Both the position numbers and the translations under genes were made by a program. From positions 62,001 to 126,000 of the IMG/VR virus record IMGVR_UViG_3300042891_000711: a stretch of 64,000 bases of DNA. One strand, 5' to 3'. The notes beneath the pieces are model-generated. The model was not told the origin of the DNA and searched no databases. It saw only the letters and a program-made list of their open reading frames with translations. Positions within the stretch are counted from its first letter, which is position 1. Each line of letters opens with the position of its first letter. Positions 6,201 through 50,989 of the stretch are shown piece after piece.

Positions 6201-7310
6201 GTGTATTTAGAAGTGACTGATGATAATACAAATGCAGATGGCCAAGGGCCAGCAGATATACAATTTCCGGCCATGGCCACTCCGTATTATGATTATGAAG
6301 GAAATACTTACACTACTGCATACCCAAATTCTTTCAGTAATATGAAAGATGTTACTGTTTCGGCATTGGGATATGCTAATAAAGGGGCATTGCCTGACTG
6401 GATGACCAGTAGACAAGCAAATGGTTTCATACTTGGATTTACTCGTGCAGTAGTACTTGCGTACACTGTACCAGGTGCAAGTAGTTTAATTGCTTATAGA
6501 TTTGCGCAACAAGACTTTAATGTCAACGAAATTGACTTTACCGTTGATAGATATCAAGTTGATAATATATACACGGCTAATTACGATATTACTGCTGGTG
6601 CATTTATTACCAGTAGAGAAACAACCTTTGACCGTTATCCTGGATTATCCAGTGTGTTTGTGGCCACTGGCACAGTTGATTATGCTGTGAGTATATCATA
6701 TGAAAGTATCAACAATCGTGCAAAATCATCTATTATTAGTCTTGGTGGTTTAGATGGTATTAAGTCCTTCAAAGATGGTGAAACACTAGTATTTGCACGC
6801 CAAGAATTTAGACAAGATCAAAACGATATCGGTGATTACAACCAAGGGTGGAATGATGTTGCTACAGTGTGGGGCGGAGATTCTTGGGATTATGATAATA
6901 ACACAGCTACCTTGATAGATGATCTAGGATGGGATGCCGCTAGCGCAGTCCCTGGATATAGAGAAAATAATCTTGATCCAACGGTAGATAACGAACGTAT
7001 CGGCATATGGCGTATTAACATCGCAACTGATGGTATGGTTACCTTAACCTACCTACAAGAAGTATCATTCTATAATAAATTATACGTGAGAAATGGTTAC
7101 ACCTACGGTGCAACTAATATCTACTATGATCCAGTTATCAAACCAGGTAATTTAATACCAAATTACAGTATTATACCAGAAGAAGTAAAAATATTATCCA
7201 CACAATTTGACGGAAATGGTACACGTTTCTACAGCTATCGAGATAGTTATACTATACCTGAAGCCGGAGATAAATACATTAAATTTAGTAAACTCGGAGT
7301 ATTTAATTAA
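3300..7310 (+). CDS. large virion structural protein with putative Ig-like domains (baseplate/tail)
   Basis: Repeated LPxGL...G.ISG...YTFTV Ig-like motifs and internal ANVGDxITQ repeats; structural operon context. Confidence 0.75.
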   Translation: MALPKWITPAGQLGIVPETEYYEYNLDAYDATGGTLVYSHISGKLPLGIQLIPTGKLQGIPISELGGDRNVTYTFTIRVKNSTTNGVSDRTFNITVSNVAPPIIIPRDVDLGIYFDGTIVNIQLEAVESTPGANLIWRKSSGELPPGLSISAAGLIYGYIEPIVGPGPGSDPGWDQTPWNILGWDFSLIAISKAFTFTVEVSDGVNYDATPYRILIVPQDALQADATTITTDTTESGGDELTIDVGARHEPIIVTTQVELEPQRQSSYFSFQIVGLDLNGDVLQYILPATETGKFDEELLVGPESPYINSTLIGGNLFVGVNSTINSTEPALLSGDDIKVLSLTSPDELNWYNATVNNYIKLRLTGNKVITGSVGNFITQAISGANATISSISTTTGSIEVAGNVIVGSLEIRGNTNIGTLSVSNQLITANVGDFITQVSGSANATVRANVVSSLSVPIELTSGVFTNGSENIKINGSTINAYPVSSTFDDILVTANIGDIITQTSSGATATVTANVVSVVEIPVVYTSGTFTFNSGNIQINSTNINAYPRLFTGTVNPVGVTANVGDVITQTSSGATATVTANVASALVIPVTFTSGIFTTGSGNITVGATNVPAHPTNIAAEADVGMVYNSANNFLLDSAAASAIVYINYVSTGATPTSVISVGVTLGLISTEGTVGFDEAKFDQSPLAIAEGITLDIDSGWLTGRLPTLTANETNYLFEVLVYKRDYPAYQTSGLFTLTVLGDLNNKINWITPSDLGTIENGRVSDLSINAVSTKGKNVQYSLTPASAHRLPQGLKLIPSGLISGRVSFELFSLDQGTTFLDGTILGDATTTFDATYTFTVTARDYDNSITADRTFTIRVLNRNTMPYEDLYLKSLSSKEQRAQFTSIMRNTSIFPPNLIYRNDDPYFGLADTIKTLFLPGLNPSLLSEYAAAVSTNHYEKRITLGNVKTAVARDSNFNIKYEVVYLEVTDDNTNADGQGPADIQFPAMATPYYDYEGNTYTTAYPNSFSNMKDVTVSALGYANKGALPDWMTSRQANGFILGFTRAVVLAYTVPGASSLIAYRFAQQDFNVNEIDFTVDRYQVDNIYTANYDITAGAFITSRETTFDRYPGLSSVFVATGTVDYAVSISYESINNRAKSSIISLGGLDGIKSFKDGETLVFARQEFRQDQNDIGDYNQGWNDVATVWGGDSWDYDNNTATLIDDLGWDAASAVPGYRENNLDPTVDNERIGIWRINIATDGMVTLTYLQEVSFYNKLYVRNGYTYGATNIYYDPVIKPGNLIPNYSIIPEEVKILSTQFDGNGTRFYSYRDSYTIPEAGDKYIKFSKLGVFN
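4801..5053 (+). repeat. 49-bp exact direct repeat (4801-4849 and 5005-5053)
   Basis: TAATAACACAAACAAGTAGTGGTGCAACTGCTACTGTAACTGCAAATGT twice, 204 bp apart, in frame. Confidence 0.9.
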
Positions 7311-41238: not shown

Positions 41239-41250
41239 TATTTATAAATA
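41239..41250. promoter_or_regulatory. bidirectional late-promoter palindrome
   Basis: TATTTATAAATA gives TATAAATA on both strands between divergent genes. Confidence 0.75.
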
Positions 41251-41279: not shown

Positions 41280-42017
41280 ATGAAAATAACTGAAGGTGGG
41301 AATGTATTTAAACTAGCTGATGGTAGCGAAGCAACCGGACGTATCAATCGTGCAGATGTCATTCCTACAGTTAAATGGTTAGAGCAATTAACAGGACTTA
41401 ATCTAGTAGACAATATGCTAGGGTCAACTGGCTACAAAGAAACAAGTGGCGACCTAGACCTAGCAGTTGATGTAAGTAAAATCAGCAAAGATGTACTGGT
41501 ACAACAACTATTAAAGAAAGGCATTGAACCTACTGACATTAAAAAGACAGGCGACAGCGTACATTTTAAAACACCCATCAACGGTGAAGCAAAGAACGGC
41601 TACGTACAAACTGACTTTATGTTTGGTGATCCAAACTTCCAACGTTTTAGTATGACAGGTAGTCCAGAAGGTAGCCCATTCAAAGGCATGCATCGTCATG
41701 TATTACTTGCTAGTATTGCTAAAGCACAGGGCATGAAATGGTCATACAAGAATGGCCTAATGGACCGTACTACAAACGAAGTTATTTCAAAAGATCCAAG
41801 TGAAATTGCACACAAACTATTCAATGGTAGTGCCGCTGATCTAGCATCAGTTGAAACTATCGTTGCTAAGATTAAAAATCTACCTAACTACAATGCCTTA
41901 GTAGCAGATGCACGTGAAACATTAGGCAAGGAAAATGTACAACTACCGGAATCACAGCAGGCAATAGTAGGCGAAGGTTCGGCAGCATGGTTTAAGAACT
42001 GGAAGTCAGTGCTGTGA
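41280..42017 (+). CDS. Pol-beta superfamily nucleotidyltransferase with leader
   Basis: MKITE leader; LGSTG...SGDLDLAVD...VQTDFM. Confidence 0.8.
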   Translation: MKITEGGNVFKLADGSEATGRINRADVIPTVKWLEQLTGLNLVDNMLGSTGYKETSGDLDLAVDVSKISKDVLVQQLLKKGIEPTDIKKTGDSVHFKTPINGEAKNGYVQTDFMFGDPNFQRFSMTGSPEGSPFKGMHRHVLLASIAKAQGMKWSYKNGLMDRTTNEVISKDPSEIAHKLFNGSAADLASVETIVAKIKNLPNYNALVADARETLGKENVQLPESQQAIVGEGSAAWFKNWKSVL

Positions 42018-42955
42018 GAGCTAAGGAGTTTATCTTAGAAGGCGGTTGGGCAAGTACTTTAACACAAGGTACACATATCACACCTGCACTAGTTGATGTT
42101 GTTGTACAATCATTACCTGCATTTGAACAAGCATTAAATGCTTTCTTAAAAACCAAAGACCTAGCACCAGTTAAGATAGGCACGCCAGTTGGTAGTACAA
42201 CATACTACAAACGCGACCTTGCACAAAATCCTCAACGTGAATACGGTGACATTGATGTTAACTTCTTTGTGCCACGCTTGTCTGATATGTCGGACAATGC
42301 TAACGAACAAACATACAGTTCAGCTATTAAAGAGTTTTGCGACAGTAACCCTAACTACTCAACTAACAACGGCACAAATGTTATAATTAAAGTAGGCGAC
42401 GAATATGTACAAGTTGACTTTGTTACAGCATACTATGAGAACGAACAGTGGAGTCGTGCCTTAGGACCAGAGTACAATGTTAAAGGTGTACTAAGCGCAA
42501 GTTTATACTCATCACTAGCAGAAGCATTAAATCTCAGCTTTGGTGGACGTGGAGTACAGGTTAAATTACAAAATGGTGTGCCAGTTAGTTTTAGACAAAC
42601 TAAAGATACAGAGCTTAAAACCATAACAAATAATCCCGACACATGGGCAGTTGATATTGCTACATTCCTTGGTGCTAAAACTATCAGCGCACGTTTAGCC
42701 AAGTATCCAGGTATGGGTGACGAAATAAAAACTTCAAATACTATTAACAGTATTGTTGGCATTGCTGAAAGTTTAGGCCGTCCTGAGTTAATAGAACAAG
42801 TGAAAGCAATTTACATAAGTAAAATAAGCAAGGCAGTTAATAGCAGTAAGTTTGATAAAGCTGTGACATCAGAAGCTAAGAAAAAAGCTGAAGATACCAA
42901 AGCATTATTAACAAGAGAAGCACAGCGTATATTAGGACAGTTTGATGCGATTTAA
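42014..42955 (+). CDS. Pol-beta superfamily nucleotidyltransferase with leader
   Basis: MRAKEFILE leader; VGSTTY...YGDIDV...VQVDFV. Confidence 0.78.
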   Translation: MRAKEFILEGGWASTLTQGTHITPALVDVVVQSLPAFEQALNAFLKTKDLAPVKIGTPVGSTTYYKRDLAQNPQREYGDIDVNFFVPRLSDMSDNANEQTYSSAIKEFCDSNPNYSTNNGTNVIIKVGDEYVQVDFVTAYYENEQWSRALGPEYNVKGVLSASLYSSLAEALNLSFGGRGVQVKLQNGVPVSFRQTKDTELKTITNNPDTWAVDIATFLGAKTISARLAKYPGMGDEIKTSNTINSIVGIAESLGRPELIEQVKAIYISKISKAVNSSKFDKAVTSEAKKKAEDTKALLTREAQRILGQFDAI

Positions 42956-44297
42956 AGAATTTTTAAGAGAATACAGCAGAGAGAAAACAGTCAATGTCTT
43001 TGGCAACAAACTTGTTGCGGCATTAGGCAAGGATAAGAGCCACACTCTTTCTGGTACACAGTTAGGCACGGATCGTGCGTTCATTGATCAAAAGATCAAA
43101 GTTAATGATATGATTACAGCAGAACAACGTCAAATAATTATCGATCACATCATGGTTGTAATTGAAAATTCTGACCCTACAGCAAACAAAGAGTATGTAC
43201 AGTGGTTGACTAAAGTATATGCTAACCAAGGTATTAAACTAGAAGATATAATAAGTCGTGGTAACAGTGCGCTTAAAATGTATCACGAATTCAAAGTTAA
43301 AAAAATATTACCAGCAGAATATAGAGACATTGGTCGCATTGACTTTGCTGGCTTAGAAGCAATAGCACAAAATCTTGACCTACGTAATGCCTTAGCCGCT
43401 AAAGAAGAACAAGAAGCCGCTAAGACTGTAGACAAGGGCGAAGCTGAAACTGTATTTGAAAATGCTGCAGTGCGTATCATTGTACCCAAGAATGAAGCAG
43501 CATCCGGTTACTATGGACAAGGTACACGTTGGTGTACTGCTGGACGTGACAACAATATGTACGATCGTTATGCTCGTGATGGTGACTTGTATATCTTACT
43601 ACCTAAGAAACCCGACTACGAAGGTGAGAAATATCAACTACACTTTAGTAGCAATCAGTTTATGGACGAAGGTGATAACTACGTAGACAGCGTAAAAGAC
43701 CTAATAACTAAACGCTTTGGCAATTTATTACCATTCTTTATGGAGCGCGAGCCTTCACTTAAAGATTGGTTAGTGTTTACTCCAGATGAGGTATTAAAAC
43801 CATTATTGGCTAAAATTAAAACAGCCGTAAACGACCACGTAAGCGAAATAGTCAACGACTGGGAAGTACAAGACGACTACTGGTGGGATCACCTACGCAG
43901 TGAAGGATATGTATATCCAGAAGGTCACGACGAAGAAGGCGAGATTGACTTTGATGCTGCGGCAGATGCCGATCTAAGTTACACTGATTGGAACTACGAA
44001 GCCAGCGACTTTATTCGAACAATTAATAATGCTGTAGATCTAACGCCAGAAGAAGTGCGCGAAATTGCCCAAGAGGAAGAAGATGATTACAACGGAGATG
44101 TGGGTGTTAATGACCTTGATACTATCATAGAACGCAGTATATCAAAAAATATTGGTAGAAATAGTAGTGACGGTGGTGTGATAGAATGGATTAAAGATCA
44201 CATTTATATTAAGAAAACTGGTGGTGATGGAGCATGGGACGTTAGTTTGCTGTACACAGACAAAGAAGGAAAGCGTGCAGAATACGCAATACACTAA
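42945..44297 (+). CDS. PcfJ-like domain protein with leader
   Basis: MRFKEFLRE leader; YGQGTRWCTA...KYQLHF. Confidence 0.65.
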   Translation: MRFKEFLREYSREKTVNVFGNKLVAALGKDKSHTLSGTQLGTDRAFIDQKIKVNDMITAEQRQIIIDHIMVVIENSDPTANKEYVQWLTKVYANQGIKLEDIISRGNSALKMYHEFKVKKILPAEYRDIGRIDFAGLEAIAQNLDLRNALAAKEEQEAAKTVDKGEAETVFENAAVRIIVPKNEAASGYYGQGTRWCTAGRDNNMYDRYARDGDLYILLPKKPDYEGEKYQLHFSSNQFMDEGDNYVDSVKDLITKRFGNLLPFFMEREPSLKDWLVFTPDEVLKPLLAKIKTAVNDHVSEIVNDWEVQDDYWWDHLRSEGYVYPEGHDEEGEIDFDAAADADLSYTDWNYEASDFIRTINNAVDLTPEEVREIAQEEEDDYNGDVGVNDLDTIIERSISKNIGRNSSDGGVIEWIKDHIYIKKTGGDGAWDVSLLYTDKEGKRAEYAIH

Positions 44298-44298
44298 T

Positions 44299-45000
44299 AT
44301 GAGAGCTAGAGACTTTACAAAGAACAACGTTGCTTATAACAAACAACTAAATCCAGTGGCCTGGGACAATAATCAATTAAACGATGAAGTGCGAGATCGA
44401 CTACTAGAGATTGCTGAACGTTTTGTCAGCTACTTAGAGATTCCTAATTTTAAAGTAGAAGATGTTGTACTCACAGGTAGTATGGCCAACTACAACTGGA
44501 CTAAGTTTAGTGATTTTGATGTGCATGTTGTTACTAACTACAGTGACCTACAATGTGATGATATTGCCGAAGCGTTCTATCGTGCCAAGAAACAAATTTG
44601 GAATGACGGGCACGATATTACTATCTACGGTTATGATGTAGAATTGTATGTAGAAGATGTTGCGCAACCTCCAGTTAGCGAAGGTGTATATAGTTTGTTA
44701 AACAATAAGTGGCTTAAAACTCCCGACTTTAAAGTGCCATCAATCGATCGTGCTAGTGTTAATGCCAAAGTATTAGATCTACGTAGCCAAATTGATCATG
44801 CTATTGTAGCCGCTGATGATCCAGAAGATATTAAACGTATATCAGAAAAGATTCGTAAAATGCGCCGTGCAGGATTAGATGCTGGCGGCGAATTCAGCAC
44901 AGAAAATCTAGCATTTAAAATCCTACGTAATATGAAGTACATGGATAAATTAAGTAAAGCATATCGTCAACAACAAGACGATGATTTGAGTTTAAAATAA
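44299..45000 (+). CDS. Pol-beta superfamily nucleotidyltransferase with leader
   Basis: MRARDF leader; LTGSMANYNWTKFSDFDVH...DVELYVED; start reassigned to 44299. Confidence 0.82.
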   Translation: MRARDFTKNNVAYNKQLNPVAWDNNQLNDEVRDRLLEIAERFVSYLEIPNFKVEDVVLTGSMANYNWTKFSDFDVHVVTNYSDLQCDDIAEAFYRAKKQIWNDGHDITIYGYDVELYVEDVAQPPVSEGVYSLLNNKWLKTPDFKVPSIDRASVNAKVLDLRSQIDHAIVAADDPEDIKRISEKIRKMRRAGLDAGGEFSTENLAFKILRNMKYMDKLSKAYRQQQDDDLSLK

Positions 45001-46004
45001 TGAGAGCACGTGAATTTATAACTGAAGCTATTAGCAACAAGCGAGTAATTCAGTATATTAAACAACATCACCCTAGAGGCGAATGGACTGCGGTTGCTAA
45101 TAACATGGTTATGAAATACCCAAAATACGAATTATCGTGGGTTCCTGTTAGCCAACTTAAAATAGATGGTGACGAGCCAATTGAAGATCCGTATAGTCGT
45201 GTTATTGACGTAGATCAAAGTTATGCAAGCAGACTTTCTACACAAGATATTGAAGATAATCCTATTGTCATAGACGCACAAGGACATATCTTAGATGGTA
45301 ATCATCGTGCTTGGCAAGCAAAACAATTAGGCATGGATATGATACCAGCGTATGTGCCTGTTAAAGAATTAACTGAATCACTAGATCTTGAAGTTGAAGA
45401 ATTTTTAAATAATCTAACACCGGAAGATGTTGGTGTAGACGAAGTAGGCGATTACCGTGTACACTTTGAAGGCTTTACTGATGACTGCCAATCCAGCAGA
45501 GATTACTGTCGTAATCCAAAAAAAGTGTTTCAAGAAGTATTTGCTGATTTTATCCGCCGTGAGGGTGGACAACAACCTGTAGCGTCAGGTATGGTAGGTG
45601 ATGATGACTACCCTATTCTATACAGCGTGTTTAAGGACACAGTTAGAAAAAATGTGCCGTTAACTCCAGAAAAAGCATACCAAATAGCATATAATAAAAA
45701 GAAACCGTGGCCTACAGGCAGTGCTGAAGAGCAACTAATTCGTAGTGATTTCCAATTAAGTGATTTGTATGATAGGTATGTGTTGAATCAGACCGATATG
45801 AGAGCAAATGAATTTATAAGCGAAGACGAAGGATTAAGCTATCAAGGTAATTGTACCGATGATGATGTTATTGAATATATTTTCGGTGATGCCACTACGT
45901 TTGCGCAGTTGGTTGACGAATACGGCGATGAGTTTGTATTAGACGATTTAGTAGTAAAGTATAATCCAGAAGAAGATATACACTACTTCTATTATAAGAG
46001 CTAA
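45000..46004 (+). CDS. ParB/Srx-like domain fusion protein with leader
   Basis: MRAREFITE leader; PIVIDAQGHILDGNHR; second in-frame leader MRANEFISE at 45798. Confidence 0.75.
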   Translation: MRAREFITEAISNKRVIQYIKQHHPRGEWTAVANNMVMKYPKYELSWVPVSQLKIDGDEPIEDPYSRVIDVDQSYASRLSTQDIEDNPIVIDAQGHILDGNHRAWQAKQLGMDMIPAYVPVKELTESLDLEVEEFLNNLTPEDVGVDEVGDYRVHFEGFTDDCQSSRDYCRNPKKVFQEVFADFIRREGGQQPVASGMVGDDDYPILYSVFKDTVRKNVPLTPEKAYQIAYNKKKPWPTGSAEEQLIRSDFQLSDLYDRYVLNQTDMRANEFISEDEGLSYQGNCTDDDVIEYIFGDATTFAQLVDEYGDEFVLDDLVVKYNPEEDIHYFYYKS

Positions 46005-46314: not shown

Positions 46315-46316
46315 AG

Positions 46317-46395
46317 AACACCTACCTTAGGCCCATACTCGTTATGGTGTTTGGTGTGGCCGGCTGCTGGCCTGGAGGGATGCCAAAAGTGAGCA
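46317..46395 (+). ncRNA. candidate structured RNA (family not identified)
   Basis: GC-rich intergenic island with stems ACACC/GGTGT, CCATA/TATGG, GGCCGG/CTGGCC. Confidence 0.5.
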
Positions 46396-46422
46396 AGATT
46401 AAACAAGCGATAAATACTTAAT

Positions 46423-49400
46423 ATGCGATATAGTCAAATTAAACAAGCCTTAAAAGAAGCAGAGATCATTGATGAAGTATCAATGAGTCCTTCCAGCCTA
46501 GAAGCGTTCGCTAACAGTCCGGAAGCTGATGGTATGCTTATGGGTATTGAATTTGAAATGTGCGTACCCAATGCCAGCTCAGGTGACTATGAGCCTGAGT
46601 GGGAATACGATTACGAATACAACGAAAGCGCCTACAATATTGATGATATTCTTAACTTCTTCCGCAACGGTGATTTCAGTAACATGAGTCGTAGTGACTC
46701 TGAGCGTTATCGTAGTGAACTATATGACGAATACCTAGACTGGACTAATGAAGCATCTAATCGCTATATAGACGATAACGTAGATGAATTAGACAGCCTT
46801 ATCCGAGATCAACTTGAAGGCGAAATTGATCGTGATGATGTCAAAGATGCGGCACGTACTCGCTGGATAGAAGCAAACCCTGACGAAGATCCCGACAGTG
46901 ACGATGCTGATGCAGAAATTCGTGTCATAACATTAGAAATGATCGAAGATCGAGTAGATGAATTAATGGCAGATACCAGCGGTAGAGAGTATCAATATGC
47001 CTACGACCAAGCACGTCAAGAAATGGAAGATGACTTCCGTAACGGTGGTGATGGCGATGAAGGTGCTTGGTTAAGCGACATTGGCATTGGTGATATGCAG
47101 GACGCTGAACGTCATTGGGGCTTTGATTGGCCTCACATGTATGACGCTAACGAAGGCAATGATGGTGGTGATGCAGACATAGATCAAGTAGCAGATGACT
47201 TTTATGGTGCTACTGGATATGAAGCACGCGGGTTTAGTAATTACCACAGTGGCAATCGTAGTCAGCAACAACAAGAAGGTTACTTTATTATTGAACCCGA
47301 TGCTTCAATTGATGCTGAACAAGGTGATGCAGGCTTAGAGTTTATCAGTCCAGCTATGCCACTTAAAGATGGCTTGACTATGTTGAAAAAAGTTAAACAA
47401 TGGGCTAAGTTGGCAGGTTGTTATACTAACAAATCAACGGGCCTACACATGAACATCAGTGTGCCTAACATGACCACTGATAATCTAGACTATGTTAAAC
47501 TAGCATTATTCCTAGGTGACGAATACGTACTTCAAGAGTTTGGTCGTCAGTACAATACCTATGCTAAAAGTGCCATGAAGATTGTTAAAGAAAAGATTCA
47601 GGCCAATCCAGAAAACGCCACAGAATTGTTGGCCAAGATGAAAGAACATCTTGGAGCGGCAGCTAGTAAACTAGTACACAGTGGCGTTACACAAAAGTAT
47701 ACAAGTATCAATACCAAAGGCAACTACGTAGAATTCCGTGGTCCAGGTGGTGATTATCTAAACGAAGACATACCTAAACTTGTTAATACTGCTCTACGCC
47801 TAGCACAAAGCCTACGTATTGCCACAGACGAGTCAGCATACAAACAAGAATACGCTAAGAAATTATACAAACTAATCAGCCCAGAAGGCGAGTGGACTGA
47901 TCCTAATAACTCAGTAGCATTGTTCAGTCGCTATGCTCTAGGACAGATCAACAAATCAGAATTAGTAAGTAATGTTCGTCAAGCACAAACAGCTCGTAAA
48001 GAGAAGAAAGGCGAAGAAGTACAGTACTGGGTAATGAATAAAGATGGCACTGGTGGTAAGCAAATGGTATTTGCCGCTAGTGAAACAGCCGCTATCATCC
48101 TAGGCGGTAAACAAATGGGCATGAACCGTGAACAAAGTATCAGCAAACTTAAAGCTGAATTGTTTGTAGATACTAACAAAGAAAATACACCGCCAGCATC
48201 AGTACCACTTAGTTGGATTGATTGGATAACAGATACACTACCTACGGTTACTGTAGATACAGCAAATTCTGTAAGAGAAAGAATAAAAGATGGCAGAGAT
48301 AATTTAGATGCAGATGCCAATGGTTGGATAGTTAGACAGATTGACAACGAACTACGCAGTAGAATGGATCAAGGAGTAGTCGACGGCAATGAAACACGCT
48401 GGAAGGTTTATTTTGCTCGTGGTAGACATGTAGATCAAGACCCGGTATTCGTCGATGCTGATAGTCCTCGTCAGGCTAAACTTAAAGCCGCAGATATATT
48501 CATGCGAGAGCAACGGATATCAGTGGGCCTACACGATTTAGAAGCCATTGCTACCACACAAGATGCTGGCCGTCCAGAAGTAACTTGGAATATTATAAAC
48601 GGTCTAGGTGAACCTGCTGGTACTGTTAACGCAAGAACCAGTGACGAAGCACTACATGTATACGGTAGTGTTAATAATGTCGATACTAGATACTATAGAG
48701 CAACACCAGTTGAAACAACGCCAAGTGCAGGCACGTACACTAGTTTCGCAGATGCGCAGGCTGCGGCAGATAGAGCAAACGCTGGTAATACCACTAACAG
48801 AGAAGTGTTTGACGGTTTAGCCAATAACTGGCAAGAGTGGCTTCAGGGTGTTGGTAGACATACCGACGGTAATCTACAGCGTATACTTGATAATATGGCC
48901 CAGGGTGTTAATGCTCACTATACCAACTTAACTCTTGACGAGAAAGACTTTATTATTAATACTGTTAATCAAGAAATACGCCGCCGTAGTAGTAATAACG
49001 AATTAGCTGCCAACGCAGGTGGTGCCGAAAACGCAGTGCGTGATAGTTTGCCCCAAGCACATCGTGAGTGGTTAGACAATGTAGCCGATAAGAGTGACAT
49101 GGATCTAATCAACGTATTCCGTAATGTCAGCACAACCGCAGTATTAAATGATCAACAGACTGCTTACTTTAGAGTTATTATTAAACGTGAACTACGTCGT
49201 CGTGGTATCAGCGACAGTGAGCGCGATGCTAGCGAACAAGGCGCAACTCCAGTACCTAATTATGAGATATATGCGCCAGACAGCGGAGTAGTAGTACACC
49301 AATTCCACGCCGACAACGAAACAGACGCAAATAGAAAGTTCAGTGAATTTGAACAGAATTACGAATCAGATTACGATTTCCATCACGAGTATCGCAGAAT

Positions 49401-49650
49401 TGGCCCTGCACAACAGGAATTACCATTGGAACCCGCAGTGCCACAGACCACTGCTACAGATTTTGAAGTAGTTAAAGCTGATGGTAGTGTGGTGTCAAAC
49501 ATACGAGGTGCTGATATGGTCTATGCTCATCGTAAAGCACGTGAATTAGAACAAGACCTGGGCTTAGAAAGTGGTGCGTTAACAGTTAGAGCATTACCAA
49601 CAACAAACGAATCTATAAAACAATTACGCCGATTGGCAGGATTAGTATAA
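46423..49650 (+). CDS. putative amidoligase (COOH-NH2 ligase) multidomain protein
   Basis: GIEFEM, IEPDASI, GLEFISP, TNKSTGLHMNIS, KYTSIN, VEFRGPGG; leader ending LKE; C-terminal LRRLAGLV. Confidence 0.82.
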   Translation: MRYSQIKQALKEAEIIDEVSMSPSSLEAFANSPEADGMLMGIEFEMCVPNASSGDYEPEWEYDYEYNESAYNIDDILNFFRNGDFSNMSRSDSERYRSELYDEYLDWTNEASNRYIDDNVDELDSLIRDQLEGEIDRDDVKDAARTRWIEANPDEDPDSDDADAEIRVITLEMIEDRVDELMADTSGREYQYAYDQARQEMEDDFRNGGDGDEGAWLSDIGIGDMQDAERHWGFDWPHMYDANEGNDGGDADIDQVADDFYGATGYEARGFSNYHSGNRSQQQQEGYFIIEPDASIDAEQGDAGLEFISPAMPLKDGLTMLKKVKQWAKLAGCYTNKSTGLHMNISVPNMTTDNLDYVKLALFLGDEYVLQEFGRQYNTYAKSAMKIVKEKIQANPENATELLAKMKEHLGAAASKLVHSGVTQKYTSINTKGNYVEFRGPGGDYLNEDIPKLVNTALRLAQSLRIATDESAYKQEYAKKLYKLISPEGEWTDPNNSVALFSRYALGQINKSELVSNVRQAQTARKEKKGEEVQYWVMNKDGTGGKQMVFAASETAAIILGGKQMGMNREQSISKLKAELFVDTNKENTPPASVPLSWIDWITDTLPTVTVDTANSVRERIKDGRDNLDADANGWIVRQIDNELRSRMDQGVVDGNETRWKVYFARGRHVDQDPVFVDADSPRQAKLKAADIFMREQRISVGLHDLEAIATTQDAGRPEVTWNIINGLGEPAGTVNARTSDEALHVYGSVNNVDTRYYRATPVETTPSAGTYTSFADAQAAADRANAGNTTNREVFDGLANNWQEWLQGVGRHTDGNLQRILDNMAQGVNAHYTNLTLDEKDFIINTVNQEIRRRSSNNELAANAGGAENAVRDSLPQAHREWLDNVADKSDMDLINVFRNVSTTAVLNDQQTAYFRVIIKRELRRRGISDSERDASEQGATPVPNYEIYAPDSGVVVHQFHADNETDANRKFSEFEQNYESDYDFHHEYRRIGPAQQELPLEPAVPQTTATDFEVVKADGSVVSNIRGADMVYAHRKARELEQDLGLESGALTVRALPTTNESIKQLRRLAGLV

Positions 49651-50315
49651 TGAACTTATTTGAAATGTTTGAACAAGGGCCACCTAAGCCAACGCTGATA
49701 GATGCATTGCGTGATTTTTTGCCCATCGCAGTTCAACATTTAAAATTAGATCACATTCCTAAAATTCGTTTAGTTAAATCATTAGATGATACAACATTTG
49801 GTCGTTATGTCAATGATGAGCAAGTAATTTATGTAGTTGTTGATAATCGCAATCCTGTAGATATCTTGCGTACACTAGCACACGAAATGGTACATTATGC
49901 GCAGGGTCAAGATGATCAACTTGATAGCACTTCCGGCGAAACAGGCAGTCCAATTGAGAACGAAGCCAACGCAGAAGCAGGTGTTATTATGCGGTTGTTT
50001 AATCAAAAACATCCTAGCTATATGCAGGCCGATCCAATAGCATTACCTGAAGCATGGAGTGCAAAATACAAAAAGAGTATTAATTGCAGTAACCCAAAAG
50101 GATTCAGTCAAAAGGCGCACTGTGCCGGACGTAAGAAAACTGATGAGAACTTTGCAGATGGTAAGAAGCCAGGCCGTAAAGGACTAGCCAAACGTTCAGG
50201 TGTTGACTGTGGTCAAAGCATAAGTAAATTAAGAAGCGTTGCAAAAAATAGCAGTGGCGAAAAGCAACGTATGGCACACTGGTGCGCTAATATGAAATCA
50301 GGGAGAAGTAAATGA
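49650..50315 (+). CDS. zincin-like (HEXXH) protein plus basic Cys-pair modules
   Basis: MNLFEMFE leader; LRTLAHEMVH...ENEAN. Confidence 0.72.
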   Translation: MNLFEMFEQGPPKPTLIDALRDFLPIAVQHLKLDHIPKIRLVKSLDDTTFGRYVNDEQVIYVVVDNRNPVDILRTLAHEMVHYAQGQDDQLDSTSGETGSPIENEANAEAGVIMRLFNQKHPSYMQADPIALPEAWSAKYKKSINCSNPKGFSQKAHCAGRKKTDENFADGKKPGRKGLAKRSGVDCGQSISKLRSVAKNSSGEKQRMAHWCANMKSGRSK

Positions 50316-50989
50316 AGTCAAATGAATTTTTATCAGAATCTGAAAAGCAAAAAGGTGTTGACGGTAAAGCCTGCTGGGATGGTTATAAGCGCATGGGCAC
50401 TAAGAAGAAAGGTGGCAAGACTGTTGACAACTGTGTTAAGATGGAAGAATCCATTGATGAGTACGATGACGAAGCCGGCATGGTTGACAGTAATTTAGAA
50501 ACAATTAAACGTGCTGCTGAAGAATTAGATCAAGTGTTAGGCCAAGATGACAACATGGCTGAATGGGCACAGGAAAAACTAGCAGTAGTTAAGAGCATGT
50601 TAGTTGCTGTTAAAGACTATGTAGTTAGTCAAAAATCTACAGGCATCGATCCACAAATAGACGAAGAACTAGAAGAAACATACCACGGTGATGAGTTCTT
50701 CGAAGCCTACGGCGAAATGTGGTTTAACGAAGATGAACAATTAGACGAAGCTGAATATCACGGACGTAAAGTTCCCCTAGGTAAACCAATGCAGGGTGAT
50801 GTTAAGAAGTTTAAAGTATATGTTAAAGATCCTAGCACAGGTAACATCAAAAAAGTAAACTTTGGTGATCCTAATATGCGTATTAAGAAGTCAAACCCTG
50901 CGAGACGTAAATCATTTAGAGCACGTCACAACTGTGCAAACCCGGGTCCACGCACTAAAGCACGTTACTGGTCATGCCGCAAGTGGTAA
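50312..50989 (+). CDS. modular basic internal head-like protein
   Basis: MKSNEFLSE leader; ACWDGYK...DNCVK; RKSFRARHNC...YWSCRKW. Confidence 0.72.
   Translation: MKSNEFLSESEKQKGVDGKACWDGYKRMGTKKKGGKTVDNCVKMEESIDEYDDEAGMVDSNLETIKRAAEELDQVLGQDDNMAEWAQEKLAVVKSMLVAVKDYVVSQKSTGIDPQIDEELEETYHGDEFFEAYGEMWFNEDEQLDEAEYHGRKVPLGKPMQGDVKKFKVYVKDPSTGNIKKVNFGDPNMRIKKSNPARRKSFRARHNCANPGPRTKARYWSCRKW

What the first reader, a model, noticed from the sequence alone, without database searches (positions are those of the whole stretch)
45000..46004. Gene fusion caught in the act: second leader inside the ORF
Seen: in-frame ATG at 45798 starts MRANEFISE, nearly identical to the next gene's MRANEFLTE (DNA atgagagcaaatgaattt vs atgagagccaatgaattc). 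It is preceded by CGAT where neighbours at 44299 and 46006 have TAAT. An internal LTE/S site also separates the ParB module. Inference: stop-codon loss fused two leader-bearing genes, showing how the polyproteins may arise.
Basis: partly seen in the sequence, partly recalled or inferred. Interest (0 to 1): 0.6.

Follow-up and report, generated by a model that had tools for sequence, protein, structure and literature searches.

The report
Leader-tagged gene fused into phage polyprotein
A freshwater T4-like giant phage carries a gene in which a complete second "address tag" (the 9-residue leader that normally starts its neighbours) sits in frame inside the coding region. This shows that its probably capsid-packaged proteins are built by joining tagged gene cassettes, but the joined form is an established, widespread allele, not a fresh stop-codon accident.

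Summary
An in-frame ATG at 45798 opens MRANEFISE. It matches the next gene's leader at 16 of 18 bases and follows CGAT where neighbouring starts have TAAT. A KELTE|S joint follows the ParB-like module.

The window belongs to a 219-kb lake-water phage record that encodes a T4 gp21-type prohead protease. The leader (M-R-A-x-E-F-[I/L]-x-E) resembles the T4 capsid targeting sequence MKTYQEFIAE and ends in the gp21 cleavage motif L/I-x-E.

The gene lies in a hypervariable cluster of leader-tagged cassettes. In relatives, each module (ParB-like, middle, C-terminal and others) occurs either alone behind an N-terminal leader or fused behind an E-L-T/N-E-type joint in the same register. The C-terminal domain exists as a stand-alone 68-aa leader-bearing gene in another T4-like phage.

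So the idea of a fusion of leader-bearing units is supported. Two parts of the interpretation are not:
- **"Caught in the act":** the fused allele occurs in three other viral contigs, several protein clusters and four independent lake sequencing runs, with no stop or indel.
- **A simple TAA-to-CGA stop loss:** it does not fit the reading frames. Recombination at leader and joint repeats is more likely.

Capsid targeting and cleavage are inferred, not shown.

The parts
41243..41250 (+). TATAAATA, a T4-type late-promoter-like box 29 nt upstream of the first gene of the cluster (41280)
   Evidence: The motif is under-represented: 3 in the window against 10.8 expected. Ten of 13 copies in the 219-kb record lie 5-36 nt before an ORF start, including a 571-aa ORF starting 5 nt after one copy, in the position of the T4 portal gene (not tested against any family).
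42014..42955 (+). Leader-tagged cassette gene, 313 aa, GTG start, MRAKEFILE
   Evidence: Conserved in L006-L008, L010, L018 and L020.
42945..44297 (+). Leader-tagged cassette gene, 450 aa, MRFKEFLRE
   Evidence: Matches phrog_17056, of unknown function.
44299..45000 (+). Cassette gene, 233 aa, variant leader MRARDFTKN, nucleotidyltransferase domain
   Evidence: Pfam NTP_transf_2 E 1.4e-4. phrog_36119 E 2.5e-51. Homologs in T4-like cyanophages.
45000..46004 (+). The 334-aa multi-module ORF, the subject of the finding
45000..45026 (+). Leader 1, MRAREFITE (residues 1-9). Predicted capsid-targeting propeptide, cut after E9.
   Evidence: Sequence. pLDDT below 50. Analogy to T4 CTS MKTYQEFIAE (PMC8442874) and the gp21 motif L/I-x-E (PMC9026906).
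45027..45377 (+). ParB/sulfiredoxin-like module (residues 10-126), ending in the KELTE joint (45363-45377)
   Evidence: phrog_620 E 1.4e-6. Foldseek best hits are ParB, Noc and Srx, best E 2.8e-3. The cassette is swapped between strains: 42-70% identity to L006/L007 inside it, 95-100% in the flanks. It is absent from L008-L010 and from the joint 45018>45370 seen in runs X2, X4 and X19.
45378..45641 (+). Middle module (residues 127-214), a small alpha/beta domain of unknown function
   Evidence: Folded in the model, pLDDT 66-85 by 10-residue block (residues 131-210). Occurs alone behind a leader (P0022), before ParB (P0014, P0017) or after it. No named family.
45642..45797 (+). Extra 52-residue segment (residues 215-266), present only in some variants
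   Evidence: Absent from L008-L010 and P0013. Present in P0029-P0035. pLDDT below 50. No convincing relative elsewhere, only a weak match to the tail of a 273-aa cassette in L020 (E 0.035).
45798..45824 (+). Embedded complete leader 2, MRANEFISE (residues 267-275). Predicted internal protease site after E275.
   Evidence: 30/30 identical (45797-45826) to the start of the 170-aa cassette in co-occurring strains. Identical in L005-L007.
45825..46001 (+). C-terminal 59-residue domain (residues 276-334), a mobile module
   Evidence: pLDDT above 80. Stand-alone genes P0003-P0007. Also lies inside large polyproteins of other phage contigs.
46006..46314 (+). Leader-tagged cassette gene, 102 aa, MRANEFLTE, Pol-beta-type nucleotidyltransferase
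   Evidence: Pfam Polbeta E 2.8e-7.
46315..46422 (.). Conserved G+C-rich intergenic element that closes the cassette array
   Evidence: The same sequence follows the last cassette in L006 and L023. No Rfam match. No stable fold, z +1.0.
50312..50989 (+). Further leader-tagged gene, 225 aa, MKSNEFLSE
   Evidence: In L011 its mature part is fused to the upstream gene through a VQLAE|S joint.

Best explanation
ORF 45000-46004 is a three-module cargo polyprotein gene. It sits in a hypervariable array of leader-tagged cassettes in a freshwater T4-like giant phage.

The 9-residue leader M-R-A-x-E-F-[I/L]-x-E is the counterpart of the T4 capsid targeting sequence. It would dock the protein to the prohead core and be removed by the gp21-type prohead protease after [I/L]-x-E.

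Modules are joined exactly at this cleavage point. Usually only the E-L-T/N-E end of the former leader survives as an internal joint, as at KELTE|S after the ParB module. At 45798 the whole leader survives, ATG included.

The most likely origin is an in-frame fusion of a leader-bearing C-domain cassette to the upstream gene, through recombination at the repeated leader and joint DNA. The result is now a stable allele. The embedded leader most likely serves as an internal protease site that frees the 59-residue C-domain inside the capsid.

Shown here: the anatomy, the modular variants, the mosaic borders and the reality of the junction. Inferred: capsid targeting, cleavage, the direction of the event and its mechanism.
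For: **T4-like head-maturation context**
- A gp21-family prohead protease (PF03420, E 1.3e-20) lies at the end of the same record. Its own N-terminus carries EILTE|D.
- A TATAAATA late-promoter-like box sits 29 nt before the cluster and before a 571-aa ORF at the position of the T4 portal gene (not family-tested).
- From the literature: the T4 CTS is MKTYQEFIAE (PMC8442874). gp21 cuts after L/I-x-E, and CTS residues 4 and 7 target while residues 8 and 10 govern processing (PMC9026906). T-even internal proteins are diverse, sharing only the CTS, and sit in variable loci (PMC3012670, PMC2839356).

**Leader distribution**
- 5 pattern hits in the window against 0.11 expected.
- About 60 copies in related loci, all at gene starts except this one.

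**Modules shuffle at the leader and joint register**
- ParB: MRAKEFIIE|NLSNTQ versus ADELNE|NLSNTQ.
- Middle module: MRAREFITE|SLDPE versus KELTE|SLDPE.
- C-domain: MRISEVLCE|SQSLSY (stand-alone P0003), TELTE|DADLNY and MRANEFISE|DEGLSY.
- NFADGK module: MRANEFIIE|NFADGK versus KTDE| and QVAE|.
- L011 joins two window genes through VQLAE|S.

**Recombination borders**
- The ParB cassette is only 42-70% identical between otherwise 95-100% identical strains.
- ParB-less and short-joint haplotypes coexist in the same lake samples.
- The embedded leader is 30/30 identical to another cassette's real start.

**Structure model**
- Three folded domains. pLDDT falls below 50 at residues 1-8, 123-126 and 215-276, so the proposed cut sites lie in flexible linkers.

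**The junction is real**
-.
Against: - No experiment or proteome shows that these proteins are packaged or cut. The link to the CTS is by analogy of a short motif plus the presence of the protease family.
- The direction of evolution is unresolved. The full internal leader could have replaced a decayed joint (form ...KNTRENLELTE|) by gene conversion, rather than marking a primary fusion.
- No split version of exactly this junction was found in the close lineage.
- The origin of the 52-residue extra segment is unknown.
- Low pLDDT in 215-276 may partly reflect the shallow alignment (26 rows).
- The major capsid protein lies beyond the end of the record, so its cleavage site could not be compared.
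Confidence: 0.65

Rival explanations
1. Plain stop-codon loss. Two adjacent leader-bearing genes with a TAAT-ATG junction were fused when the TAA mutated to CGA.
For: The context AC-TAA-T-ATG recurs before true leaders, at 44299, 46006 and several related loci. The embedded copy reads AC-CGA-T-ATG.

An in-frame arrangement of stop, one codon and leader does exist in a relative (L020...KQDV, stop, R, MRANEFLKE). One-step stop loss is therefore possible in this family in principle.
Against: At 45794-45796 the triplet is in frame 2. The upstream coding frame is frame 0 right up to the ATG, and frames 1 and 2 carry many stops, the nearest seven codons upstream.

A substitution at that triplet therefore cannot fuse the genes; an extra indel would be needed. 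No relative with a stop at this junction was found.
Confidence: 0.07
2. The embedded ATG is kept because it is used. Internal initiation at 45798 would make a separate leader-tagged 68-aa protein in addition to the full-length polyprotein, a gene within a gene.
For: The ATG and all nine leader codons are identical in every long-form copy. Some true cassette starts, such as 44299, also lack a Shine-Dalgarno sequence.
Against: No Shine-Dalgarno-like sequence lies upstream. There is also no nearby stop for termination-reinitiation coupling, which all true cassette starts have (stop within 0-11 nt).

The long forms are so similar (95-100% identity here) that conservation carries little weight. Other variants replace the ATG with a Met-less joint without losing the C-domain.
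Confidence: 0.12
3. The leader is mainly a DNA-level or translation-initiation element: a recombination joint or a coupling signal, not a capsid-targeting or protease-site peptide. The embedded copy would then be a neutral scar.
For: Leaders are conserved at the DNA level (20-29 of 29 bases between cassettes) and coincide with mosaic borders. Capsid targeting was not tested.
Against: Internal joints keep only the peptide-level E-[LF]-x-[TSN]-E end, with different codons and no ATG. That argues for selection on the peptide.

The motif ends in the gp21 specificity L/I-x-E. It resembles the T4 CTS in the residues that matter there: F, I/L and E (PMC9026906, PMC8442874). The phage's own protease carries EILTE. 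The joints fall in predicted flexible linkers.
Confidence: 0.15
4. A sequencing or assembly artefact hides a stop codon or a frameshift at 45790-45800.
For: None found.
Against: The same junction is present in three other IMG/VR contigs from different samples, in protein clusters from NCBI, JGI, ENA and Logan, and in contigs from four separate lake runs with no indel.
Confidence: 0.01

Closest known systems
[quoted passage not shown]
   Same: - A short N-terminal tag ending in E-F-I/L-x-E.
- A gp21-family prohead protease in the same genome.
- Many unrelated proteins that share only the tag.
- A hypervariable locus whose gene content differs between close relatives (PMC9026906, PMC3012670, PMC2839356).
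   Different: - The tag has 9 residues and starts M-R-A.
- The cargo includes enzyme-like modules (ParB/Srx-like, nucleotidyltransferases) rather than small basic proteins.
- Several modules are strung into one ORF with tag-derived internal joints, and in one case a complete embedded tag. I found no description of that for T4 IPs.
Multi-site processing of T4 core proteins (gp22, gp67, gp68, Alt) and of the ejection and inner-body proteins of phiKZ and SPN3US by gp21-like proteases
   Same: Head proteins are cut at several short x-x-E motifs by the prohead protease. Propeptides serve for targeting (PMC9026906, PMC5694885).
   Different: In those cases the fragments are scaffold pieces or propeptides that are discarded. 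Here the pieces are independently folding, independently occurring modules, so the precursor behaves like a true polyprotein of cargo domains. This is predicted, not shown.
Modular shuffling in hyperplastic regions of T4-type genomes through flanking repeats (PeSL cassettes; IP-locus elements of Repoila et al. 1994, as cited in PMC2839356)
   Same: Short repeated sequences at cassette borders mediate insertion, deletion and replacement of non-essential genes between close relatives.
   Different: Here the repeat is inside the coding sequence (the leader and joint codons). Recombination therefore shuffles protein modules in frame, not just whole genes.

Membership tests
T4-type CTS-tagged internal (capsid-packaged, ejected) proteins | An N-terminal propeptide of about 10 residues ending in the gp21 cleavage motif L/I-x-E | tested here: met
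   MRAREFITE, MRANEFLTE, MRAKEFILE, MKSNEFLSE and the embedded MRANEFISE all end in [I/L]-x-E. The motif definition comes from PMC9026906.
T4-type CTS-tagged internal (capsid-packaged, ejected) proteins | The phage encodes a gp21-family (Peptidase_S77) prohead protease | tested here: met
   PF03420: E 1.3e-20, 71 bits against a cut-off of 27, at the end of the same record. The match is cut by the contig end.
T4-type CTS-tagged internal (capsid-packaged, ejected) proteins | Unrelated mature parts that share only the tag, in a locus whose content varies between close relatives | tested here: met
   Six to ten different tagged cassettes per locus, with presence, absence and replacement between contigs.
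T4-type CTS-tagged internal (capsid-packaged, ejected) proteins | Sequence similarity of the tag to the T4 CTS at the residues needed for targeting (4, 7) and processing (8, 10) | tested here: inconclusive
   F, I/L and E align with T4 F7, I8 and E10. T4 Y4 has no counterpart, and the tag is one residue shorter (PMC9026906).
T4-type CTS-tagged internal (capsid-packaged, ejected) proteins | Physical presence in the head, removal of the tag by the protease, and ejection into the host | not testable with these tools
   Needs virion proteomics or biochemistry.
ParB/sulfiredoxin-like domain (residues 10-126) | Sequence or fold match to ParB N-terminal/Srx domains, including the DGxHR motif | tested here: met
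   phrog_620 E 1.4e-6. Foldseek top hits are ParB, Noc and Srx, best E 2.8e-3 with probability 1.0. DGNHRAW is present. No Pfam hit at E 0.01 or better.

The most novel reading that the evidence does not exclude
The leader acts as a combined address tag, protease site and in-frame recombination joint. It lets T4-like giant phages assemble, swap and dismantle multi-domain cargo polyproteins, in effect a cassette system that works at the protein level. Fused cassettes would ride into the prohead on one N-terminal tag in fixed stoichiometry and be cut apart inside the capsid at tag-derived joints.

A parallel system with QGVAE joints in other giant-phage lineages carries the same C-domain.
Probability: 0.4. 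Interest if true: 0.65.

Novelty: new variant of a known kind. Interest (0 to 1): 0.5.

Why it matters
Proteins packed in phage heads and injected with the DNA are the first phage factors to meet host defences. How phages acquire and diversify them is poorly understood outside T4.

This locus shows a simple rule in natural variants. Modules are exchanged and concatenated exactly at the tag and cleavage-site codons, and the embedded intact leader is the least-decayed example.

If cleavage is confirmed, three things follow:
- A sequence signature for finding ejected effector modules in uncultured giant phages.
- An explanation of how multi-effector polyproteins arise.
- A natural design for loading several proteins into a T4-type capsid from one precursor.

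Tried and rejected
**Searches that found nothing useful**
- Megablast and tblastn of the region against 50,697 deposited phage genomes: no match. No cultured close relative was found.
- Pfam on the 334-aa protein: no family at E 0.01 or better.
- Foldseek against the PDB: only the ParB/Srx part matched. The ESM Atlas gave no named relative for the middle module.
- Origin of the 52-residue extra segment. A word-based search restricted to it found only the same gene family. Local tblastn over all fetched loci gave one weak hit, to the tail of a 273-aa cassette in L020 (E 0.035 pairwise), which is too weak to build on.
- Search for a split junction. A DNA pattern across the junction found only the three known contigs in viral contigs, and the 20-mer found nothing in metagenome contigs.
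- PF07068 (gp23): no match. The record ends inside the protease gene, so the capsid gene is probably beyond it.
- The conserved intergenic element at 46315-46422: no Rfam family and no stable fold.
- Repoila et al. 1994 could not be read. It is cited only through PMC2839356.

**Ideas rejected**
- L023 (the gene ends after the extra segment) as the unfused ancestor. Its end aligns better with the decayed-joint form plus a 17-nt deletion and frameshift.
- Alternative reading frames through 45330-45830: both are full of stops.

- Read laying was given 1,501 letters.
- No non-standard genetic code was used.
Full report
**1. The observation**

ORF 45000-46004 (+ strand, 334 aa) begins MRAREFITE. 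It contains an in-frame ATG at 45798 that opens MRANEFISE (residues 267-275). The next gene (46006) begins MRANEFLTE, and the two 18-base starts differ at two positions. Bases 45794-45797 read CGAT, whereas TAAT precedes the ATGs at 44299 and 46006. K-E-L-T-E|S lies at residues 122-127.

A degenerate leader pattern hits the window five times against 0.11 expected, all in the cluster at 42-46 kb. With zero mismatches it has four hits in the whole 219-kb record and none for the reversed control.

Across the window and related loci there are about 60 leader copies. All lie at gene starts, 38 codons or fewer after an in-frame stop. The one exception is this copy, 268-274 codons in.

**2. Context**

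The window is bases 62001-126000 of a 218.9-kb IMG/VR virus record, estimated 62% complete, 38% G+C. Evidence on what kind of phage it is:
- A T4-type family-B DNA polymerase and a Lon-like protease.
- A gp21-family prohead protease at the very end of the record (PF03420, E 1.3e-20).
- That protease's N-terminus carries EILTE|D.
- TATAAATA, the T4 late-promoter consensus (my own knowledge), is under-represented: 3 in the window against 10.8 expected.
- Ten of its 13 copies in the record lie 5-36 nt before an ORF. One precedes a 571-aa ORF in the position of the T4 portal gene (not family-tested), and one lies 29 nt before the first gene of the leader cluster.
- More than 18 lake-water metagenome runs hold the stretch.

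This is an uncultured freshwater T4-like giant phage. No deposited phage genome is close to it.

**3. The cluster**

Seven tightly packed genes carry the leader or a variant of it. Six lie between the leaderless 245-aa gene at 41280 and the roughly 1,000-aa amidoligase-like gene at 46423. The seventh (50312) lies downstream of that gene.

| Start | Leader | Note |
|---|---|---|
| 42014 | MRAKEFILE | GTG start |
| 42945 | MRFKEFLRE | |
| 44299 | MRARDFTKN | nucleotidyltransferase |
| 45000 | MRAREFITE | the ORF in question |
| 45798 | MRANEFISE | embedded in that ORF |
| 46006 | MRANEFLTE | Pol-beta-type nucleotidyltransferase |
| 50312 | MKSNEFLSE | |

Related contigs keep the flanking genes but carry different sets of six to ten tagged cassettes.

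**4. Variants of this gene in relatives**

- **(i) Long form with the full embedded leader:** the window, L005-L007, P0008, P0029-P0031.
- **(ii) The same, but the junction reads ...VLKNTRENLELTE|ADALNY:** P0032, P0033, P0035. BLAST aligns it to ...VLNQTDMRANEFISE|DEGLSY with a two-residue gap. It looks like a decayed leader without its Met.
- **(iii) The gene stops after the extra segment, with no C-domain:** P0034 = L023. Its end aligns best with form (ii) plus a 17-nt deletion, so it appears to be a derived truncation.
- **(iv) Short 160-aa form, leader|middle module-TELTE|C-domain,** with neither ParB nor the extra segment: L008-L010.
- **(v) ParB plus middle module, then a stop:** P0009, P0011, P0012.
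- **(vi) Reversed order, leader|middle module-ADELNE|ParB:** P0014, P0017.
- **(vii) Middle module alone behind a leader,** 93 aa: P0022.
- **(viii) C-domain alone.** P0003 is a 68-aa gene starting MRISEVLCE|SQSLSY, next to a gp13 gene in another T4-like phage lineage (19 contigs were read). P0004-P0007 are further stand-alone forms.
- **Two ParB modules in tandem:** P0035.

**5. The rule behind the variants**

Every module is preceded either by an N-terminal leader or by an internal E-L-T/N-E-type joint, at the same distance from the module's first conserved residues. Examples:
- MRAKEFIIE|NLSNTQ versus ADELNE|NLSNTQ.
- MRANEFIIE|NFADGK (a 63-aa stand-alone gene in L005) versus KTDE|NFADGK, inside the window gene 49650.
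- MKSNEFLSE|EQQRLDAKCW versus VQLAE|SQRLDAKCW. The second is in L011, where the two window genes 49650 and 50312 are one 270-aa ORF.

The internal joints are therefore best read as remnants of leaders from fused cassettes. Only the part that matches the protease motif is kept. The copy at 45798 is the only fully intact embedded leader.

**6. Recombination at these borders**

- Against L006 and L007 the window is 95-100% identical on both sides, but only 42-70% identical inside the ParB cassette (45000-45300). The window's ParB allele is the L018/L024 type, at 83-89% identity.
- At the DNA level, the ParB-less form is a precise join between the leader's GAATTTATAACTGAA and the joint's GAATTAACTGAA.
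- In the same lake samples, contigs show the ParB-less joint (45018>45370) and two alternative C-domain junctions.
- Contigs from four runs continue past 46398 into a 30/30 copy of 45797-45826, followed by the 170-aa cassette (...EDNSVVAVRPG). The embedded leader is therefore identical to a true gene start in co-occurring strains.

**7. Is the fusion an error, or fresh?**

Neither.
- Contigs from X1, X2 and X4 (DNA) and from X19 (an RNA library) bridge 45798 with no indel. The only nearby change is a synonymous C>T at 45794 in X19.
- Three IMG/VR contigs from other samples, and several protein clusters, carry the identical junction.

**8. Mechanism of the fusion**

A TAA at the CGA position would lie in frame 2. 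The upstream coding frame is frame 0 up to the ATG, and the other two frames are closed by many stops.

In-frame arrangements of stop, one codon and leader do exist in the family (L020), so stop loss is possible in principle. No such relative was found for this junction. Given points 5 and 6, recombination at leader and joint repeats is the more likely route. The direction remains open: a primary fusion, or conversion of a decayed joint by a neighbouring leader.

**9. Likely function**

What the literature gives:
- The T4 CTS is MKTYQEFIAE (PMC8442874).
- gp21 cuts after L/I-x-E. In the CTS, residues 4 and 7 govern targeting and residues 8 and 10 govern processing (PMC9026906).
- T-even internal proteins are a diverse set that share only the CTS (PMC3012670).
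- They lie in variable loci with border repeats (PMC2839356).

The leader here shares F-[I/L]-x-E with the T4 CTS.

The AlphaFold2 model (mean pLDDT 68.5) shows three folded domains: residues 10-122, 127-214 and 277-334. pLDDT falls below 50 at 1-8, 123-126 and 215-276, which places all three proposed cut sites in flexible regions. Only the ParB/Srx fold could be named.

I infer the following, none of it shown. The precursor is expressed late and docked to the prohead core by leader 1. It is then cut after E9, E126 and E275. The pieces are delivered with the DNA.

**10. Wider pattern**

The C-domain also lies inside polyproteins of up to about 1,240 aa in other giant-phage contigs. There the modules are separated by a different repeated joint, QGVAE| (L039-L041, P0004, P0005). 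Cargo polyproteins with repeated x-x-E joints may therefore be common in freshwater giant phages.

**11. Verdict**

Fusion of leader-bearing units holds. Stop loss at CGAT, and "in the act", do not.
- The finding is a new variant of a known kind: T4-type CTS-tagged internal proteins, here concatenated through tag-derived joints.
- Interest is moderate (0.5). The comparative pattern is clean and testable, but the key functional steps are inferred.

Noticed in passing
window 46315-46422; also L006 about 6997-7087 and L023 about 1090-1217: A conserved G+C-rich intergenic element of about 100 nt follows whichever cassette is last in the array: the NTase gene here, the 331-aa gene in L006, the truncated gene in L023. 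It begins with the stop, TAAAGAACACC. It has no Rfam match and no stable predicted fold on the + strand.
   Followed up: partly
L011 4106-4918, compared with window 49650-50315 and 50312-50989: In L011 the metalloprotease-like 221-aa gene and the MKSNEFLSE gene form one 270-aa ORF joined by VQLAE|SQRLDAKCW. This is a second, independent fusion in the same locus, with only an L-x-E joint left.
   Followed up: partly
window 50148-50312 (residues 167-221 of gene 49650); L005 4085-4276: The NFADGK...NMKSGRSK tail of the 221-aa protein is a stand-alone 63-aa leader-tagged gene in L005 (MRANEFIIE|NFADGK). In P0020 it is fused after the middle module.
   Followed up: partly
L039, L040, L041 (viral contigs); P0004, P0005: Other giant-phage contigs encode long polyproteins, up to about 1,240 aa. 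Their modules, including the same C-domain, are separated by a repeated QGVAE joint, apparently a parallel system with another cleavage motif.
   Followed up: no
G000:C1:218497-218901, outside the window: The gp21-like protease starts MASYLKENLTFDNARMEILTE|D. It carries the same I-L-T-E motif as the leaders, reminiscent of the LIE motif near the T4 gp21 N-terminus noted in PMC9026906.
   Followed up: partly
window 38937, 41239-41250; 13 sites in the whole record: TATAAATA is strongly under-represented (3 in the window against 10.8 expected). Ten of its 13 copies lie 5-36 nt upstream of ORF starts, consistent with T4-type late promoters.
   Followed up: partly
window 46423-49650: A 1,075-aa protein with an amidoligase domain (PF12224, E 1.3e-6) starts MRYSQIKQALKEAE and is conserved at the right edge of the cassette array in all relatives. 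Whether its N-terminus is a variant leader (L-K-E) was not examined.
   Followed up: no
L047 (Synechococcus phage S-CRM01, gene g125): The cyanophage homolog of the 233-aa nucleotidyltransferase (about 39% identity) starts MRHLESRTKHLISE. This is possibly a propeptide with an L-I-S-E site, a hint that tagged NTases occur in cultured T4-like cyanophages.
   Followed up: no
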